From Phyllobates terribilis (lineage: Eukaryota), in contig NW_027362771.1 in the NCBI RefSeq assembly GCF_046119375.1, positions 261,764,001-261,828,000 of the forward strand: 64,000 nt of DNA, written 5' to 3'. The notes below the pieces were generated by a model, which had not been told where the DNA came from, did no database searches, and saw nothing but the letters and a program-made list of their open reading frames with translations. Both the position numbers and the translations under genes were made by a program. Of the stretch, positions 46,801 to 59,500 are shown piece by piece (position 1 is the first letter of the stretch; every line of letters starts with the position of its first letter).

Positions 46801-49800
46801 CAATTACAACTCCATATATACCTAAATATATTCTGTGTTCTTAAATTGAGCTGATCTGCGTTAATTGGAGATCATGTAGAAAACATGTCTAATTATTACA
46901 GCTAAGACAGGCAGAATTGGAAGCTGCACGGTTAGCAAAGGAGAAGGAAGAGGAAGAGGCTCGCCAGCAAGCACTTGTCCTGAAAAAAGAAAAAGAGATA
47001 CAGAAGAAAGCAATAAAGAAAGAACGTCAGCGGCTACGCACTACATGCAAGGTGGGTAAAACCATGGGGGGTGCCAAATTTATATTCAGTCAATTTGAAT
47101 ATGCTTTTTATAGCTAGGACAGTGTTTAACCATAAACCTTAATGTTATTACTAATCCCACTTTAAAACTGTATTCACTAGTACTTGATTGTGGTGTGTGC
47201 CTAACTCTCATACGATTCCCCCTATTAGAACACATGGTGGAATCTAAAAAACTCGGAGTTCCATTCTAGAAGCCCCAGCACAGAGCCACTAATATTTGTA
47301 TGGCCTCTATTTTTAATATTTCCCCTGAAGCAATAGAAGAAATGTGTGCCCAGCAGTAACATCCAATCGCTTCAGAAGCTGGGGCCACTGTATTCAACAT
47401 CTTAAAATACTCTGTAGATGGAGGCTTCTGTTGATAGGAGGATGTCCTAAAACGTGACTTTGATGCAGAGAGGACTACAAACATGGTGTGAAATAAAACT
47501 GTGACATGAAACATTTTACATTCTGTTTGAATTATATAATTTTTACCTTTTAAGAATGATGGCAGACTGGCGTCCGATTCTGTTGAGTGGGAATATTTAT
47601 GGGCGGTGTTGGAAAAGTTTGGTATAGGACCTAGTTTTATTTCATGGGTTAAATTGCAGTATGGTAGGCCAGTGGCTAGAATACGGGTAAATGGACACCT
47701 CTCCCCGGCTTTTGGACTGAGTAGAGGTATGCCGCAGGGGTGCCCGTTGTCCCCCCTGCTCTTTGCACTGGCCATTGAACCCCTGGCATCGGTTATCAGG
47801 GAGCATCCAGGAATAGTTTGGTTTCGTAGAGGGAATACTGAAGAGAAGGTCGCGTTATACGCTGATGACGCTTTATTATTTTTGGCTAAAACTTCAGAGT
47901 ACCTTCCTATAGCAATGGAAACAATAGAAACATTTGGAAAATACTTTGGTCTGAAGATAAATTGGAGCAAATCAGTTATACTTCCATTGGATAATACCGA
48001 TGAGAATGCTTCCCACTACATTAATTCGGGTTTACAAGTGGTATCGGAGTTTAAATATGTAGGCATCAATATATCAGCAAAAATAAATGATTGTGAGTTG
48101 AATCTTGACCCAGTCTTAATTAAATTTAGAGGTAAACTAGGTGCCTGGTCTAAGTTACCATTGTCGGTTGTGGGCCGTGCTAACCTGGTTAAAATGATCT
48201 GGATGCCACAATTGCAGTATGTTCTACACAACTCCCCAATATGGATAAACCAGAGGTGTTTCTTTAAAGTCAGTCAGGAGTTTAGAAAATTAATATGGTG
48301 CAAACAGACTGTGAGAATTAAACTGGAAACATTGCAAAGAAACAAAACAATGGGAGGGCTTGCGGTTCCTAACCCATGGGTATATTATGTGTCATCTCAG
48401 CTTCAACACATTCGGGATGGAATGACCCTGGGGGAGGGGGAACTCAGTGTATTTTGCTACAGCATTATTTCCAATCAGATAAACTCTATGAGGTATTGGA
48501 GGCGCATAAGTTCAGGACACTTGGAGGCAAAATACCGACTATCCTGTTATGTCACAAACTTTGGGGGACGGTGAAAAAATTACTTCCACAAGTTATATGT
48601 AATTGGATTGACTATTGTTACTATGTTCAAATATTTGTTCCTCTAATTATGCTGTTTTTTTCAGAGCCAGGATGTATAAATAACTCATGTTTAATGCTTC
48701 TTAAGGTTGGAGGGTGGAGAACTGTGTTTCTCCAATGTTTGTCTGGTTGTTGTTGTTGTTGTTTTTTTTTACCTTTGTGAAAATCTTTATAAAAATTAAT
48801 AAAAAAACATCTGATTTAAAAAAAATAAAAATGATGGCAGACTACTTTTCCACTTTTGAAATGTAAACCAGAATAGTGCAATGGCATTGAAAACCACATC
48901 ATAATGTGACAAACCCCAAATGCACACCATGCTTACACACTTTCATATAATATACATGGTACAGAAAAGGAATGTATACTGTTTTTTTATTTCCATTGGC
49001 TTTTGTTTATATTTTTTTTTTAAACTACAGAATTGGAATTACTTCTCTGAAAATGAGGCGGACAGTGTGAAAATGATGGAAGAAGTAGAAAAGTTGTGTG
49101 ATCGACTTGAACTAATTAGGTATGTGGTTTTTTTCATTGGAAAAAACGAGAGAAACGAACTGGAATATAAGTTGGCATGCATGCAACGTGTAGGTGCATG
49201 TTCACACTGGCCACTAAACAGACAAAACCTAAGATAGAAACATAATAAGCAAATACCCTGCAGTAAGTAAATAAATGGCAGAAGTGTATGTAAATATTAT
49301 AGGGTACTTCGTTAACATTGTTTTGGTCAAAAAAACATAATAGCCATCCCACAGCATCAAGGTGACCCTACTAGGGATGGTCCTAACCTCTAGTATTAAA
49401 ACCTTACCATATGTCTAATGACCTGAATGTGAATAAGGGGTGAGGCCCCGATTAATGGACACCCAGCCACGGGGAGCTATATAAACGTAATGTCCAGTTC
49501 AAAGAAAAGGGAGGCCATGCCATTATTTGCATAAGGTGCAAAATGTTAGTTTTTTTTTGTTGTTCTGCGTGATGTTGCTGAGCAAATGATGAATGCCTGA
49601 CAAAATGGCTTTGTATGGTATGTAATTCCCATACTTAATGGTGGTTACCATGCCTTATTTGACTTTTCCGGTGTCGTTTTCTGCTCTTAGTTTACAGTCT
49701 CTAAATGAGGCCCTTTCTGGAAGCTCGAAAGAAGAAAGTAAAAGTGCTGTGGAGAAGCAGGTATGTGAAAAGGACCCATCGGAAACTAATACAGATGTGA

Positions 49801-53578: not shown

Positions 53579-56500
53579 GCGCCATTTTCTGTAGTGTCTC
53601 CATTTTTCGGGATCTGGGCCTAGGTAAGAGCTTATATTTTGCTCGCCGAGCTGACATTTTTATTGATACCATTTTGGGGTCGATACGACGTTTTGATAAA
53701 CCATTATTGCAATGTTGCGGTGACCAAAAAAAACCATAATTCTGCTGGCGTTTTGATTTTTTTTCCTCGTTATGCTGTTTTCCGATCGGATTAATTTTTT
53801 ATATATATTGATAGATCGGGTGATTCCGAACACAGCGATACCAAATATGTATTTTGATTTTTTTTGTTTTATTTTGATAGGGCAAAAAAGGGGTGATTTG
53901 AACTTTTTTTTTTTAAAAAAAACAAAACTTTTTTTCAGTTTTCGCATACTTCAATAGTCTCTATGGGAGTATGACAATCACAGGGGTCTCCTGCAGATCC
54001 CGGATTGTCATGCCAACCCATCAGCAACCCGCGATCATATAATGAGCATGCCGATGGGTGGGTTTTATGACGCGCTTCCGGCGCTGCCATGTTAAATGCC
54101 GCTGTTGGAGTTTGATGTTAACAGCTGCGGGTGGATCGCGATTCCACCTGCGGCTGTTAAGTGCATATGACAGCTGATCAGATCAGCCGTCATGTGCCGG
54201 AAAAGATTTGGGCTTATTGCCGGAGCCTTCCTGGAGTGCAGGGACACGACCTTGGACGTACCTATACGTCCAAGGTTGTAAAGGGGTTAGTAGTAATTGA
54301 ATAGACAATAGTGTATATGAAATCCAGTTCATTGAAATTTATCTTGCCCATCTAAAAGTAAGTTTCTCATTCAGCATATCTGAAGTGAGGCACCTTTTGC
54401 TCTGTTATAGGGAGGTTATTCTGCCAACCATGAGCAACTGGAAGAAATCCACAGCACTACCGGTTTATGGTGCTCGAGGAGGGTCCAATACCAAACTATT
54501 AGTGAGAAACACCTCGGCAAAGCTACTTTGAATATATATTTTTAATGCAGTCCAAGAAAATCACAAAGTTTCGGTCAACATGACCTTCATCAGTGTAGTC
54601 CGACCGCTGTGGGTAATCAAGATTGGATGAAGGGGGAAGGGGACGCTGTGCTCCAGAAGGATTGGGTCCCAGGGATCTGTGGCTCTCAAAGAGTGGGGAA
54701 CGTGGTGGGCAGGCATCGGAACAAGCGGATTTCACTGATGAAGGTCATGTTGACAAAAACGTTTGTTTTCTTGGACTGCATTAAAAATATATATTCAAAG
54801 TAGCTTTACTGAGTGCCAAGGTCTTTCTCAACCATGAGCAACTATCTGCTTAAAGCGTAAGTTGTTTTAATCAGGGTGGATTTGATTTAAATCTAACTGA
54901 TTTAAATCACGATTTAAATCACTAGTCAGTAAGGCTTGATTTAAATCAGTGATTTAAATCAAAGTTTCTACCTAAACTAGTTCTTGCTACTTTAACATGC
55001 AAGTAGATGAAGATTTTTAGAATCACTTTTTATATTACTTTTTTCTCCCCAGTTTAATGGGTTAATCATTCATATTTGGACACCACTGTTCTGTTGTACT
55101 TAGGAAGGAGAAAAATAATCCTGACCTTAATAACAATTTAAATAGATTTATTCAACTGAAACCATAACAACATTACAGCATACGTTATTTGCTTAAACAA
55201 ACATCCATGTTTGTTAACTAATTTGGCTAAACAAAATATATATATATTTTAAGAAACTTAGACTGTCAGCCCAGCCGACACATGAAAAACTTAAATACTA
55301 CTGTCCCTGCTGTCCTCTGTAGCTCACTCGTCGTCATCTTCATCATCTTCTTTGTTCCTATTCATAATCTGGAAAAGAAAAACAAGCTTTCCTGCTTTAT
55401 TGGGTTCCAACCGATTTCTCAATTTAGAATGAATGAGTCCAAAGGAAGAGAATATTCTTTCAATGCCTGCAGAAGAAGCTACTGCTGTTAAAAGTGAAAT
55501 CATTACTTGAACAGTCTCTAAATCCAAGCGCTTAAGTGACTTCCACCAGTTTACTGGTGTGACCTTCCTTAAAATATCTTCAGCAAACATATATTTCTTG
55601 AATGGTTCCCCCTTAGCTCTGAAGTTTATTATAGTTGGCATTAAAGATGGATGATTGCTGGATACCCATGTCATAGCTAACTCCTCTTCCTCAGCACTTA
55701 GGTTTTGACCCTGATATTGGATATTGACAATATTTGCCAAAAAATGAGCTGGAGTCAGTGCTTGTCCCATTCGTTTGTTTACTGCTTGTAATTTAATTCT
55801 GTCATTGTGTAGTTCTGTTTTTAAGTGTTCACTCGGTTCCTTCCAAATTTCAACAGCATCCGCAATAAAACAGCTATTTTTCTGTATTTTGTTTAAAGCT
55901 TGAGAGATGGGTTTCAGGAAGCTCAGCATATGTTCAACATTTCTCTTACGGCCAAAATCCTCAACATTGGGCTTGACAGTGCCATCTATTTTATCTCTAT
56001 TTTCTTCACAAAGTGTCATCAGAATAGGCCAGTTTTTGATATACTGCTCAAAATAGTCCACCACAGAGTTCCATCTAACATCTTGTGGGAGCGTTAGCTT
56101 GGTTCCACCCATCCTTTTCAGAGCTGCTGCAGCAAAATGATTATTACGGAAGTATTTAGCAATTTCAACAACATTAGCCTTTATTTCTGGAACACTTAAG
56201 TCTTTGGCTAAGAGGTGCAGCAAATGAGCACTGCAACCATATGTTATTAGCAGCTTTGTATTCCCTCCCTGCTCTTCTAAATTTCTTCTCATCTTGGATA
56301 CGTTTGCAGCATTGTCAGTGACCAAACTGCGTACTAGACATTTGAATTTTTGTTCACATGTTGCTATAGCTTTTACTGCCACTTCTTGTAAGTATTCTGC
56401 TGTGTGTGCATTTCCTGACGTATCAGTTGTTTGTGCAAGGAAGACTTTACCTTCTTCTGTTGTTATACAAGCACATACAATAGGATCATTGTGGACATTA

Positions 56501-59500
56501 CTCCACCCATCAATACTTAGGTTAACAATTTTACCCTCCAGAGCTGTTGCACATTGCTCCATTTCTCTGTCATACACTTGATCCAGCAGTTTCCCTGCAA
56601 CATCAGCTCTGCTGGGTGGACTGTATCCTGGTCTCAGTGACTGAACCATATTAATGAAATGTGGGTTCTCAGTCAGACGGAAAGAAGAGTTCGTTGCATA
56701 AATAAACTGGGCAATTTTTTCATCAATCAACTCTTTTTCTAATCTGCTAGTTCTTATCACAAACCTATCTATGGTGGTTCCAGGAGGTAAAGGTTTTTTC
56801 TTCCTTTTGGGTGATGGTGATATGTGTCTGTGGGTGTCTGATGATGATGATGATGCTGCTGCTAATGAAGCACTATCCTGGATGGATAACTCTGAAACTG
56901 TAGAACAGGATGATGATGATCTTGGAGGTGGATAGTTTCCAGAATCCATGAATTCCCCTAAACAAAAAAAGTCAATGCTGTTATTTTATTGTTTATACAA
57001 TTTCTGCTTATTGTACACAACACATCACTGCCCCTGCCCCAAAAGGAATATTTGTTTTTCTTCATAACTGTACCAAATGACAGTAACATGCAGTAATAAT
57101 AAGAAATATAATTTTTCTCACACATGACAGTTCAGTCTTTAGAAATAGGATTCAATAAAAATGTTTACCAACAGATCCTGCCTGTTCAGAAGTGTTTCTT
57201 TGGTCATCTTCATCACCGCACTTCTCATGATGTTGCCTCATTCGCGCCACCAGGCCTTGCATCTCTTTATTGCATCGTTTGCATTTTGCACGCATGCCTG
57301 CCTTACCGATAGGCGAAGGAGCTTCATTAAAATATTCCCAAACTGGGTCTCTTTTACGGCCTGCTGCCATTATAAGGAAAGAATGTAATAAACCTCAGAT
57401 CGTACACACAAACAGATCCAGACTTGTCTGTCTGTGGCTATGCTGCAGTATTGTGCTCAAAGTTTCACTTTCATTTTCTTGTCTGCTTGCCCTTCCTCCT
57501 CCTCACACTTAGATTCACATTCTTCTTGTGTTGTGCAGAATAATTCCACTCCAAACAATCAGAAACATATTGTCTAACTTCTTGGACTTGGCACTGAAGG
57601 GGTTGATTCTGTATTCATAGGTTTGTAGAACAATAGGATTAAGGTCTTTTTCTCAACTTTGTTCATGTTGTAACATTTTTGCCGTGAAGAAGAGGCTGGG
57701 ACCTCTGCGGAGTCAAATTCAGTTTTGAGAACTGCGTAAGTAAAGCGAGCGTCTGTGATAATATAGGAGAGAAACTGCCCACTAATCCTACAGAAACCTC
57801 TGGAAGAGCATGGCATTGTGAATGTTACACATATACAGCCTTTATTCTACTGAGTTAAGCAACTCAGCTTTATCTCATGATGGAAGAACCTTTGGATGGT
57901 AAAATATTTTCCTCAAAAAGCAGTTTATTGAAAAAAATCCGATTTAAATAAAAAAAAATCAGATTTTTTTTTTTTATTTTTTTTTAAAAAAACATTGATT
58001 TTTATCCACCCTGGTTTTAATGGGAAAGTCTTTACTGAATACAGATTTTAGTTCAGAATTGAAAATTGTGATAATGACTGATCAATTCTGGCAGAGAAAG
58101 AAGCAGATTTGTCTGATAAGATATATCACAGAGTTGCTGATTTTCATGTGTATTATTGATTTATGAAATAAAAATTAAAATGATGGTTACACTTTAACCA
58201 TAAGGATATTAAAACTTGAGAGAACTTTTGAACATGCATAATACATTTATTTAGGAGGGCCTCCCAATGTTCTTTATTTCTTATATACATTTCTAAATTG
58301 TCAAATAAGTTCTGATCCATAAACTTTTGACCCTTGGGCAGGTCTACCTAATGTGAAGTGTGTTGCTTAACATCTAGGAGATTAGCCAAAGACTGCATAG
58401 GCAATTTATGGGCTGGTGTAAGGTACCACCTAATTACGATTGACACTGATCCTTGAAGTACAGAGGAAGCCTTGTGTGTAGGAGGTCCATATCTGGGAGC
58501 ATAGATCTTCATTTAGGGTTAACCAAGTGTAATCCCAATCTTGACATGTAAGATAGATGTATCAAAGGGAGCATGAAGTAAGTTACAATACAGCAGAGTA
58601 ATAATGCCTGGCGAATGGGAGCAGGATTCAGATCTTTGTTAATATGAGGGGTCTGGAGATGACAAAATTCAGATAATTTAGTATAATACAACTAGCTATT
58701 GAACCCGTTCTACGGGTGGCGAGCATTTTTAATGGTACATTTTTAATTTTATTAATGGCACCAGAGTCAGCACGTGTGCATACCACGCTATCCTGCACCA
58801 TTTTTTTTTAAAGATCCTGTGTCTGCAATAAAACGGCGCTGGAGACCGCGGTATCCGCACGCACTGACTCCGGCGCTGTTTTATTGAAGTAATGTACTAC
58901 GTCAATATAGTAGTGCGCAACCGCCGACCATAGGGATAATGATGATGGCCGGCATGTGCGCACTGCTAGGTTGACGACTTAGTAGAATTTTTCAATAAAA
59001 TGGTCCAGGAGTCAACGCTTGCGTATTCTGCTCCATTTTGTTGAAGACTTGTGTCTGTGAATTTGCATACACAGTGTCTACAATAAAATGGCGCCATAGT
59101 GCAGTATACGCACGTGCTGATTCCGGCGCCACCCATCCCGGCTTCGGACAGAAGGACACGTCCAGCATTATATACAAGATGTACTGATAATACTGGGATG
59201 TACTCACTTATGCTAAATGCTTTATATATAATCTACTGGTAATACAGGGGCTGCACTCACTTATGCTGAGCGCAGTATATATAATGTACTGATAATATGG
59301 GGGTGTACTCTCTCTCTCGTCCTGGACATAATGTCGTTATTGCGCCATACTGAGCATGCTCAGTCTATAGAGGCTTTGGACAGACTGATACATCCCTGAT
59401 ATATTCTAGATGTGTATTTAGTCAAAAATTGTATAGACTAGAATATCCCTTTAAATGATATGGATATCTTTGGGGGGACCATTTTTTCAAATACATGTAT

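What the first reader, a model, noticed from the sequence alone, without database searches (positions are those of the whole stretch)
54872..58013. Apparently intact autonomous hAT transposon with a spliced BED-finger transposase
Seen: perfect 8-bp TSD, matching 10-bp TIR cores, a strong-context ATG (ATAATGG), and a 211-nt GT-AG intron that joins the BED exon in frame to the 541-aa ORF. The predicted 611-aa protein has no stops and keeps all three acidic residues (SIDGW, VTDNA, IERIFS), CxxH, RW and the dimerisation domain, followed by AATAAA. Inference: a recent, possibly active family, of interest as a gene-transfer tool and as a horizontal-transfer candidate. I cannot assign a named family from memory.
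Basis: partly seen in the sequence, partly recalled or inferred. Interest (0 to 1): 0.75.

Follow-up and report, generated by a model that had tools for sequence, protein, structure and literature searches.

The report
Young frog hAT transposon, subtly damaged copy
This is a complete copy of a young cut-and-paste (hAT) jumping gene that poison frogs share almost letter for letter with a lizard and a cobra, so the family has crossed between species. This particular copy carries a small hidden inversion and two bad substitutions, so it probably no longer makes a working enzyme.

Summary
A 3,142-bp element lies on the minus strand at 54872-58013. It has a perfect 8-bp target-site duplication (ATTAAAAC) and perfect 10-bp terminal inverted repeats. 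Its two-exon gene encodes a BED finger, an RNase-H-like core (DUF659) and a hAT dimerisation domain. The 211-nt intron matches NCBI 611-aa gene models in Phyllobates terribilis.

It belongs to a young multi-copy family in dendrobatid frogs. Annotated frog copies differ from their majority residue at 0.6-2.1% of positions.

Full-length copies with their own perfect duplications occur in the lizard Hemicordylus capensis. They are 94-96% identical to the window copy per aligned base, intron included (dS 0.06). A decayed copy lies in Naja naja. Vertical descent cannot explain this, so the family has moved horizontally.

- a private in-frame 27-nt inversion (55948-55974) overwrites a conserved block;
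- L374P and G517E change conserved residues, and that Gly is shared with Hermes.

The copy is probably enzymatically impaired but could still be mobilised in trans.

Splicing is therefore supported only indirectly.

This is a new member of a known kind. hAT transfer between frogs and squamates has been published before.

The parts
58014..58021 (-). Target-site duplication, 5' side (ATTAAAAC)
   Evidence: Read directly from the sequence. It is identical to the 8 bp at 54864-54871.
58004..58013 (-). 5' terminal inverted repeat CAGGGTGGAT
   Evidence: One search found only two exact occurrences in the window, one at each end of the element. The same terminus is present in the lizard copies.
57930..58003 (-). 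5' subterminal region with AAATC/GATTT short repeats inside A/T runs
   Evidence: repeat families D3, D11, I12, I20. The arrangement is conserved in the lizard copies. I infer these are transposase-binding sites.
57371..57929 (-). 5' non-coding region (promoter and 5' UTR presumed)
   Evidence: 90.5% identical per aligned base to the lizard copy. The transcription start was not mapped.
57169..57370 (-). Coding exon 1: BED zinc finger (67 codons plus 1 nt)
   Evidence: Pfam zf-BED, E 1e-4. 65 of 67 residues are identical to residues 1-67 of the P. terribilis 611-aa model P0004.
56958..57168 (-). 211-nt GT..AG intron, phase 1
   Evidence: Sequence read. The gene spans of the 611- and 613-aa models (2047 and 2057 bp) imply introns of 211 and 215 nt. 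The donor and acceptor are aligned with the lizard, cobra and turtle copies.
57116..57125 (-). Alternative ATG (57125-57123) and donor (57122|57121, GTGAGA) inside the intron. Spliced to the same acceptor, it would give a BED-less 545-aa product beginning MWEFMDSG.
   Evidence: It matches the NCBI 'isoform X2' models P0003, P0005 and P0009 (545 aa), and P0013 (546 aa) begins the same way. The motif is present in the window. The donor G is absent from the lizard and cobra copies. Its use was not shown here.
55324..56957 (-). Coding exon 2 with stop codon: linker, RNase-H-like catalytic core with insertion domain, and hAT dimerisation domain
   Evidence: Pfam DUF659 and Dimer_Tnp_hAT. 96% identical to residues 69-611 of P0004. 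Foldseek's top matches are all Hermes transposase, E 5e-11.
55948..55974 (-). Private 27-nt in-frame inversion, giving KPNVEDFGR in place of the family's TAKILNIGL
   Evidence: When reversed, it matches L002 and L003 at 27/27 and L001 at 26/27. The alignment is shown. All 17 relatives aligned (A1), from frogs to Hydra, have the other orientation.
55834..55836 (-). Private Leu to Pro change (residue 374 of the exon-2 frame; WKEPSEHL)
   Evidence: Leu is at least 90% conserved across alignment A1. The site lies inside a predicted helix.
55405..55407 (-). Private Gly to Glu change (residue 517 of the exon-2 frame; RNRLEPNK) in the dimerisation domain
   Evidence: Gly is at least 90% conserved in A1 and aligns with Gly of Hermes 'RNRIGQ'.
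55147..55152 (-). AATAAA polyadenylation signal, 172 nt after the stop codon
   Evidence: It is conserved in the lizard and cobra copies.
54882..54963 (-). 3' subterminal region with five copies of the palindromic GATTTAAATC
   Evidence: The same array is present in L001, L002 and L003.
54872..54881 (+). 3' terminal inverted repeat (CAGGGTGGAT read on the + strand)
54864..54871 (-). Target-site duplication, 3' side (ATTAAAAC)

Best explanation
The stretch is one full-length insertion of a young, autonomous-type hAT DNA transposon family.

**Structure and mechanism**
- The element moves by cut-and-paste.
- A two-exon gene encodes a transposase of about 611 aa. It has an N-terminal BED zinc finger and an RNase-H-like DDE core with the CxxH and RW motifs. 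It also has an all-alpha insertion domain and a C-terminal hAT dimerisation domain.
- By analogy with Hermes (inferred), the enzyme would bind the GATTT/AAATC subterminal repeats. It would then cut at the CAGGGTGGAT termini and reinsert the element, making an 8-bp duplication.

**Family history**
- The family has amplified recently in dendrobatid poison frogs.
- Near-identical elements, including intron and untranslated regions, occur in a South African lizard and an Asian cobra. The family has therefore spread horizontally among tetrapods. Donor and direction are unknown.

**This copy**
- Its ends, TSD and open frame are intact.
- Since insertion it has acquired a 27-nt in-frame inversion and two substitutions at conserved residues.
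- It most likely encodes a crippled transposase. It could still be moved by enzyme from sister copies (inferred).
For: **Anatomy**
- The TSD, TIRs, exons and intron are as described.
- Pfam finds zf-BED, DUF659 and Dimer_Tnp_hAT.
- CxxH, RW and the catalytic Glu align with Hermes.
- An AlphaFold model of the exon-2 product finds only Hermes at the top of the PDB, E 5e-11.

**Splice model**
- Exon 1 matches residues 1-67 and exon 2 matches residues 69-611 of the P. terribilis 611-aa model.
- The gene spans of the frog models imply introns of 211 and 215 nt.
- In this frog lineage a 4-nt deletion at the end of exon 1 is offset by use of a donor 4 nt downstream. Phase is preserved.

**Young multi-copy family**
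- At least 17 protein clusters at 94-96% identity occur on many chromosomes of Dendrobates tinctorius and P. terribilis. Ranitomeya imitator adds P0021. Individual clusters hold up to 43 member sequences.
- Frog copies differ from the frog majority at 0.6-2.1% of residues.

**Horizontal transfer**
- Homology to the lizard locus starts and stops at the element ends.
- The lizard copies have the same TIR and their own perfect TSDs, GTTTGTGC and ACTCCAAA.
- Window-to-lizard ungapped identity is 90.5% (5' non-coding), 94.1% (exon 1), 96.5% (intron), 95.5% (exon 2) and 93.8% (3' non-coding).
- dS is 0.062 and dN/dS about 0.5.
- Lizard to cobra identity is 95% over 3.1 kb.
- In the tree, the dendrobatid clade is sister to the squamate clade and turtles lie outside both.

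**Damage to this copy**
- The inversion is confirmed at DNA level.
- The copy differs from the frog majority at 18 residues, 14 of them unique. Other copies differ at 3-11.
- Its terminal branch is the longest of the frog copies: 0.039 against 0.005-0.023.
Against: - No transposition, excision or empty-site allele was observed.
Transcription and use of the 57169/56957 junction in this genome rest on gene models from other genomes. They also rest on RNA-labelled runs that hold 44-58% of the sampled words. Those words could instead come from intronic pre-mRNA or from DNA.
- The effect of the inversion, L374P and G517E on activity is predicted from conservation only.
- The AlphaFold model is of middling quality (mean pLDDT 64).
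- Copy number in this genome was not measured. No second copy lies in the 64-kb window.
- The inversion could in principle be an assembly error.
Confidence: 0.85

Rival explanations
1. This copy is itself a currently active, fully functional autonomous element.
For: The frame is open across both exons. The DDE triad, CxxH and RW motifs are kept. The TIRs, TSD, subterminal repeats, splice sites and AATAAA are all intact.
Against: A private 27-nt inversion replaces 8 of 9 residues of a block conserved from frogs to Hydra. L374P and G517E hit nearly invariant positions, and that Gly is shared with Hermes. The copy has the most private changes of all the frog copies compared.
Confidence: 0.12
2. 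It is a domesticated hAT-derived host gene (ZBED-like), not a mobile element.
For: The open frame is long, and dN/dS between the frog and lizard copies is below 1.
Against: The TIRs and an 8-bp TSD are perfect. There are many paralogous copies on different chromosomes, and the insertion sites and TSDs differ between species. Non-coding parts are as conserved as coding parts, and each copy has its own private damage.
Confidence: 0.01
3. The similarity between the frog and squamate copies comes from vertical inheritance, or from cross-contamination of assemblies, rather than from horizontal transfer.
For: None specific. The donor and direction of transfer are unknown.
Against: dS is 0.06 and intron identity is 96.5% across a split that, from general knowledge, is about 350 million years old. 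Homology ends exactly at the TIRs. Each species has its own flanks and TSDs, on chromosome-scale contigs. There are fixed lineage differences: a 4-nt and a 14-nt indel, and about 5% substitutions.
Confidence: 0.02

Closest known systems
Hermes (Musca domestica hAT transposase; PDB 2BW3, 4D1Q, 6DWW, 8EDG)
   Same: Both have the same fold and motif set: an RNase-H-like core split by an all-alpha insertion domain, CxxH, RW, a catalytic Glu in an A-S-S-A-x-x-E-R-x-F-S block, and a C-terminal dimerisation helix. Hermes is the top sequence match (E 3e-5) and the top structure match (E 5e-11) in the PDB. Both make an 8-bp TSD.
   Different: Identity is only 17-19%. Hermes is an intron-less insect element with different termini. 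Here the BED finger sits on a separate exon.
Tol2 (medaka), the classic naturally active vertebrate hAT with a spliced transposase gene (own knowledge, not tested here)
   Same: Both are vertebrate autonomous hAT elements with an intron-containing transposase gene, short TIRs, subterminal repeats and an 8-bp TSD.
   Different: It is a different family. Activity of the present family is unproven.
hAT found in the tiger snake Notechis scutatus and the frog Limnodynastes dumerilii (Galbraith et al. 2022, PMC8872380)
   Same: It is also a hAT shared at very high identity (over 99%; 95-97% in other frogs) between a squamate and anurans, and it is interpreted as recent horizontal transfer.
   Different: The host species and continents differ. 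Whether it is the same family could not be tested, because no sequence was at hand.
hAT-6_XT (turtles, fishes, Xenopus tropicalis; Hassan et al. 2024, PMC11008031)
   Same: It is a horizontally transferred hAT of ectothermic vertebrates with intact TIR, TSD and DDE. Like the present family's distant relatives, it occurs in Malaclemys.
   Different: Its termini differ: the published sequence starts CAGGGGTGTCAAACC..., whereas this element starts CAGGGTGGATAAAAATC. The Malaclemys relative of the present family (L004) aligns only in the coding part, at 85%.
SPIN, hAT-HT1/2/3 and hobo_AC of Anolis carolinensis (Novick et al. 2010, PMC3014272)
   Same: These are horizontally transferred 2-3 kb autonomous hATs of squamates and other tetrapods, with an 8-bp TSD and a YARNG terminus.
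   Different: All five published TIRs differ from CAGGGTGGAT (Table 1).

Membership tests
hAT superfamily of DNA transposons | 8-bp target-site duplication | tested here: met
   ATTAAAAC on both sides in the window. GTTTGTGC and ACTCCAAA flank the two lizard copies.
hAT superfamily of DNA transposons | Short terminal inverted repeats with a YARNG terminus | tested here: met
   CAGGG-TGGAT, 10 bp, perfect at both ends and unique in the window. The definition is as quoted in PMC3014272.
hAT superfamily of DNA transposons | Transposase with an RNase-H-like DDE core, CxxH and RW motifs, and a C-terminal hAT dimerisation domain | tested here: met
   Pfam DUF659 (2e-11) and Dimer_Tnp_hAT (9e-8). CxxH, RW and Glu align with Hermes. 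D149, D214 and E499 are invariant or nearly so in alignment A1. Foldseek's top matches are Hermes.
hAT superfamily of DNA transposons | N-terminal BED zinc finger (present in most members) | tested here: met
   Pfam zf-BED on exon 1, E 1e-4, above the gathering score.
hAT superfamily of DNA transposons | Demonstrated excision or transposition | not testable with these tools
Ac-type versus Buster-type hAT, by TSD consensus (nTnnnnAn versus nnnTAnnn; Arensburger et al. 2011, own knowledge) | TSD consensus | tested here: inconclusive
   Only three TSDs are available. ATTAAAAC fits nTnnnnAn. GTTTGTGC and ACTCCAAA each fit half of it. None has TA at positions 4-5. The evidence leans towards Ac-type, but the sample is too small.
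hAT-6_XT | Shared terminal sequence and at least 75-80% nucleotide identity over the element | tested here: not met
   The published hAT-6_XT 5' end differs from base 6 onward.
SPIN / hAT-HT1-3 / hobo_AC | Family-specific TIR | tested here: not met
   None of the TIRs in Table 1 of PMC3014272 matches.
Domesticated hAT-derived gene (ZBED type) | Single syntenic orthologue without TIR or TSD | tested here: not met
   The family is multi-copy, with perfect TIRs and TSDs and different insertion sites.

The most novel reading that the evidence does not exclude
The family is still transposing today in dendrobatid frogs and in Hemicordylus. Some copies there have almost no private changes, and the two lizard copies are 98.2% identical. 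It would then be a naturally active vertebrate hAT that has recently crossed between amphibians and squamates on different continents. In the Phyllobates lineage it would also have gained an internal ATG and donor that yield a BED-less transposase acting as a self-repressor.
Probability: 0.25. Interest if true: 0.5.

Novelty: new member of a known kind. Interest (0 to 1): 0.3.

Why it matters
Naturally active vertebrate hAT elements are few, and they are useful as gene-transfer vectors. A family with dozens of open-frame copies in frogs and a lizard is a reasonable place to look for another one.

The near-identity of non-coding DNA between Neotropical frogs, an African lizard and an Asian cobra adds a clean case to the record of horizontal transposon transfer among tetrapods. 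It also raises the question of what vector carried the element.

For annotation, the case shows that 'open frame plus perfect TSD' is not enough to call a copy intact. An in-frame micro-inversion is invisible without comparison to sister copies.

Within a poison-frog genome crowded with young hATs, the element itself is ordinary.

Tried and rejected
- **RNA and DNA reads.** No test of splicing, expression or an empty site was possible. From then on, no letters of 54874-54910 were sent to any search tool, and scripts used 54911 onward.
- **Frog sister-copy DNA.** The P. terribilis and D. tinctorius files were too large to serve. Within-frog divergence was therefore measured on proteins only.
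- **Family naming.** I compared termini with hAT-6_XT and with the Anolis families. None matched. No Repbase or Dfam search was available, so the family remains unnamed here.
- **More copies in the window.** No further copy or MITE of the family was found.
- **Earlier notes of this scan.** Searches by words found other hAT families in the same genome but not this one.
- **Naja dN/dS.** This was abandoned because that copy is frameshifted and contains an N run, which I left as it is.
- **Joined product.** The two exons were never joined. All searches, alignments and the fold were done exon by exon, and the 611-aa figure is arithmetic.
Full report
**1. Observation**

Read on the minus strand, the element runs from 58013 to 54872, which is 3,142 bp.

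- It is flanked on both sides by ATTAAAAC (58014-58021 and 54864-54871).
- It ends in CAGGGTGGAT on each strand. These are the only two occurrences of that 10-mer in the 64 kb (0.11 expected; 0 of 100 shuffles gave two or more).
- The 3' subterminal 90 bp holds five copies of the palindrome GATTTAAATC. The 5' subterminal region holds AAATC/GATTT half-sites within A/T runs.
- The gene begins at ATG 57370, in the context tATAATGG.
- Exon 1 (57370-57169) encodes a BED finger (Pfam zf-BED, E 1e-4).
- A 211-nt GT..AG intron follows (57168-56958).
- Exon 2 (56957-55324, stop codon included) carries Pfam DUF659 (2e-11) and the hAT dimerisation domain (9e-8).
- AATAAA lies at 55152-55147.

The 611-aa length follows from arithmetic: 67 codons, one split GGG codon and 543 codons.

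**2. Splice model**

- Exon 1 is 65/67 identical to residues 1-67 of an NCBI 611-aa model from Phyllobates terribilis (P0004). Exon 2 is 96% identical to its residues 69-611. The missing residue 68 is the split Gly.
- The recorded gene spans of the 611-aa (P. terribilis) and 613-aa (Dendrobates tinctorius) models are 2047 and 2057 bp. These imply introns of 211 and 215 nt.
- Donor, acceptor, start context and AATAAA align with the lizard and cobra copies.
- Relative to the squamate copies, the window and the P. terribilis copies lack 4 nt (TCAG) at the end of exon 1. They use the next GT, 4 nt downstream, which keeps the phase. This is the pattern expected if splicing mattered in the active lineage (inference).
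- Four P. terribilis 'isoform X2' models start MWEFMDSG. In the window this corresponds to ATG 57125-57123 plus a GTGAGA donor at 57121, joined to the same acceptor. The product would be a BED-less protein of 545 aa. The donor G is absent from the squamate copies. Whether this isoform is real was not tested.

**3. Enzyme**

- phmmer against the PDB finds only Hermes transposase. CSAHLL aligns with CSSHLL, RWNS with RWNS, and [11 protein letters not shown] with ASSAASERTFS, which contains the Hermes catalytic Glu.
- The two Asp residues (SIDGW, VTDNA) are invariant or nearly invariant across an alignment reaching Hydra and insects.
- An AlphaFold model of the exon-2 product has mean pLDDT 64, with the core in the 80s. 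It retrieves Hermes chains as all top Foldseek matches (E 5e-11). More distant DDE transposases follow.

**4. Family and age**

- The word-based protein search returns at least 17 clusters at 94-96% identity from D. tinctorius and P. terribilis. Ranitomeya imitator adds P0021. They lie on many different chromosome-scale contigs, and some clusters hold 18 or 43 member sequences.
- Counting residues that differ from the frog majority, the annotated frog copies show 0.6-2.1%. The family therefore amplified recently.
- No second copy lies in this 64-kb window.
- The window copy shares lineage markers with the P. terribilis copies and groups with them in a quick ML tree. The markers are GSVG at the splice junction, RRNLEEQ, and the DDDE C-terminal end.
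- The source genome is therefore probably Phyllobates or a close relative. This was not verified, because run names are coded.

**5. Horizontal transfer**

- A copy in the cordylid lizard Hemicordylus capensis (L001) aligns with the window from terminus to terminus and not beyond.
- That copy and a second one (L002) have the same TIR and the same subterminal array. Each has its own perfect TSD, GTTTGTGC or ACTCCAAA. They are 98.2% identical to each other.
- Ungapped identity between the window and the lizard copy:

| Part | Identity |
|---|---|
| 5' non-coding | 90.5% |
| Exon 1 | 94.1% |
| Intron | 96.5% |
| Exon 2 | 95.5% |
| 3' non-coding | 93.8% |

- For exon 2, dN is 0.032, dS 0.062 and dN/dS about 0.5.
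- A 5'-truncated, frameshifted copy in Naja naja (L003) is 95% identical to the lizard copies over 3.1 kb.
- The Malaclemys copy (L004) is alignable only in the coding part (85%, dS 0.36). It belongs to a more distant subfamily.
- In the tree, the dendrobatid clade (support 100) is sister to the squamate clade. Cryptodiran turtles lie outside both, followed by a pleurodire/alligator pair (quick search only).
- Amphibians and amniotes separated roughly 350 million years ago (general knowledge). A dS of 0.06 and a 96.5% identical intron exclude vertical descent.
- At least two transfers are needed among dendrobatids, a cordylid and an elapid. The donor and direction are unknown.

**6. This copy is not pristine**

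- All 17 relatives aligned read T-A/V-K-I-L-N-I-G-L or a conservative variant. The pattern K-[VI]-x-N-[ILV] is kept as far as Hydra. At that place the window reads KPNVEDFGR.
- At DNA level, window 55948-55974 is the exact reverse complement of the squamate sequence: 27/27 with L002 and L003, and 26/27 with L001.
- It is therefore a 27-nt inversion that happens to stay in frame and free of stop codons.
- The copy also has private L374P, a proline inside a predicted helix.
- It has private G517E in the dimerisation domain as well. That Gly is conserved in Hermes.
- Altogether it differs from the frog majority at 18 residues, 14 of them unique, against 3-11 in the other copies. It has the longest terminal branch of the frog copies.
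- This is the signature of neutral decay after insertion.
- I infer that the encoded enzyme is impaired. I estimate about two chances in three for this. The intact ends would still allow mobilisation in trans.

**7. What is known**

- The termini differ from hAT-6_XT, the turtle/fish/Xenopus horizontally transferred family (PMC11008031 supplement).
- They also differ from SPIN, hAT-HT1-3 and hobo_AC of Anolis (PMC3014272 Table 1).
- hAT transfer between anurans and squamates has a published precedent in Notechis and Limnodynastes (PMC8872380).
- Poison-frog genomes are known to be rich in young transposons, with hAT making up 3.9% of the D. tinctorius assembly (PMC11152451). One hAT horizontal-transfer candidate was reported in Oophaga (PMC6278860).
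- Earlier notes of this scan describe several other apparently intact hAT families in the same genome (unchecked).
- I could not name the family, because neither Repbase nor Dfam was available.

**8. Limits**

There is therefore no direct evidence on transcription, splicing, the inversion in raw reads, or empty-site alleles.
- RNA-labelled runs hold 44-58% of the sampled 31-mers of the stretch. This is compatible with transcripts of the family. It could equally reflect intronic RNA, because the element lies a few kb downstream of a +-strand RAC_head (DNAJC2-like) exon and is antisense to it.

**Verdict**

This is a well-formed but subtly damaged copy of a young, horizontally transferred hAT family. 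It is a new member of a known kind and of modest interest.

Noticed in passing
window 57116-57125 (minus strand): Inside the transposase intron lie an ATG and a GTGAGA donor. Spliced to the normal acceptor, they would give a BED-less protein of 545 aa starting MWEFMDSG. This matches the NCBI 'isoform X2' models at four P. terribilis loci exactly. The donor G is missing from the lizard and cobra copies, so if the isoform is real it is a frog-lineage novelty and possibly a self-repressor.
   Followed up: partly
window 57169-57175 versus L001, L002 and L003 (alignment): The frog copy lacks 4 nt (TCAG) at the end of exon 1 relative to the squamate copies. It uses a donor 4 nt further downstream, which preserves the reading phase. 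This is a compensated indel and donor shift.
   Followed up: partly
window 48920-49234 (+): An open frame matches the Pfam RAC_head domain (E 2e-4, below the gathering score). This is consistent with a DNAJC2/MPP11-like exon on the + strand. The hAT element would then lie in or just beyond this gene, antisense to it.
   Followed up: partly
window 47606-48571 (+): A 322-aa open frame carries a reverse-transcriptase domain (RVT_1, E 2e-18). It is a retroelement fragment upstream of the DNAJC2-like exon.
   Followed up: no
L004 (Malaclemys terrapin pileata, CM051164.1): A turtle relative of this transposase lies inside the DNAJC9 gene. NCBI annotates it as 'dnaJ homolog subfamily C member 9 isoform X1'. 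That name looks like an annotation chimera between host gene and transposon, not a real DnaJ isoform.
   Followed up: no
one search hits P0023, P0025, P0044, P0077: Several other relatives are annotated as isoforms of host genes in lizard, turtle and frog: DZANK1, HNRNPUL1, LCORL and casein kinase I. These are probably transposase exons captured into gene models.
   Followed up: no
L003 3200-6400 (Naja naja CM019151.1): The cobra copy is 5'-truncated, is read in three different frames, and contains a run of 111 N, which I left as it is. It is nevertheless 95% identical to the lizard copies.
   Followed up: partly
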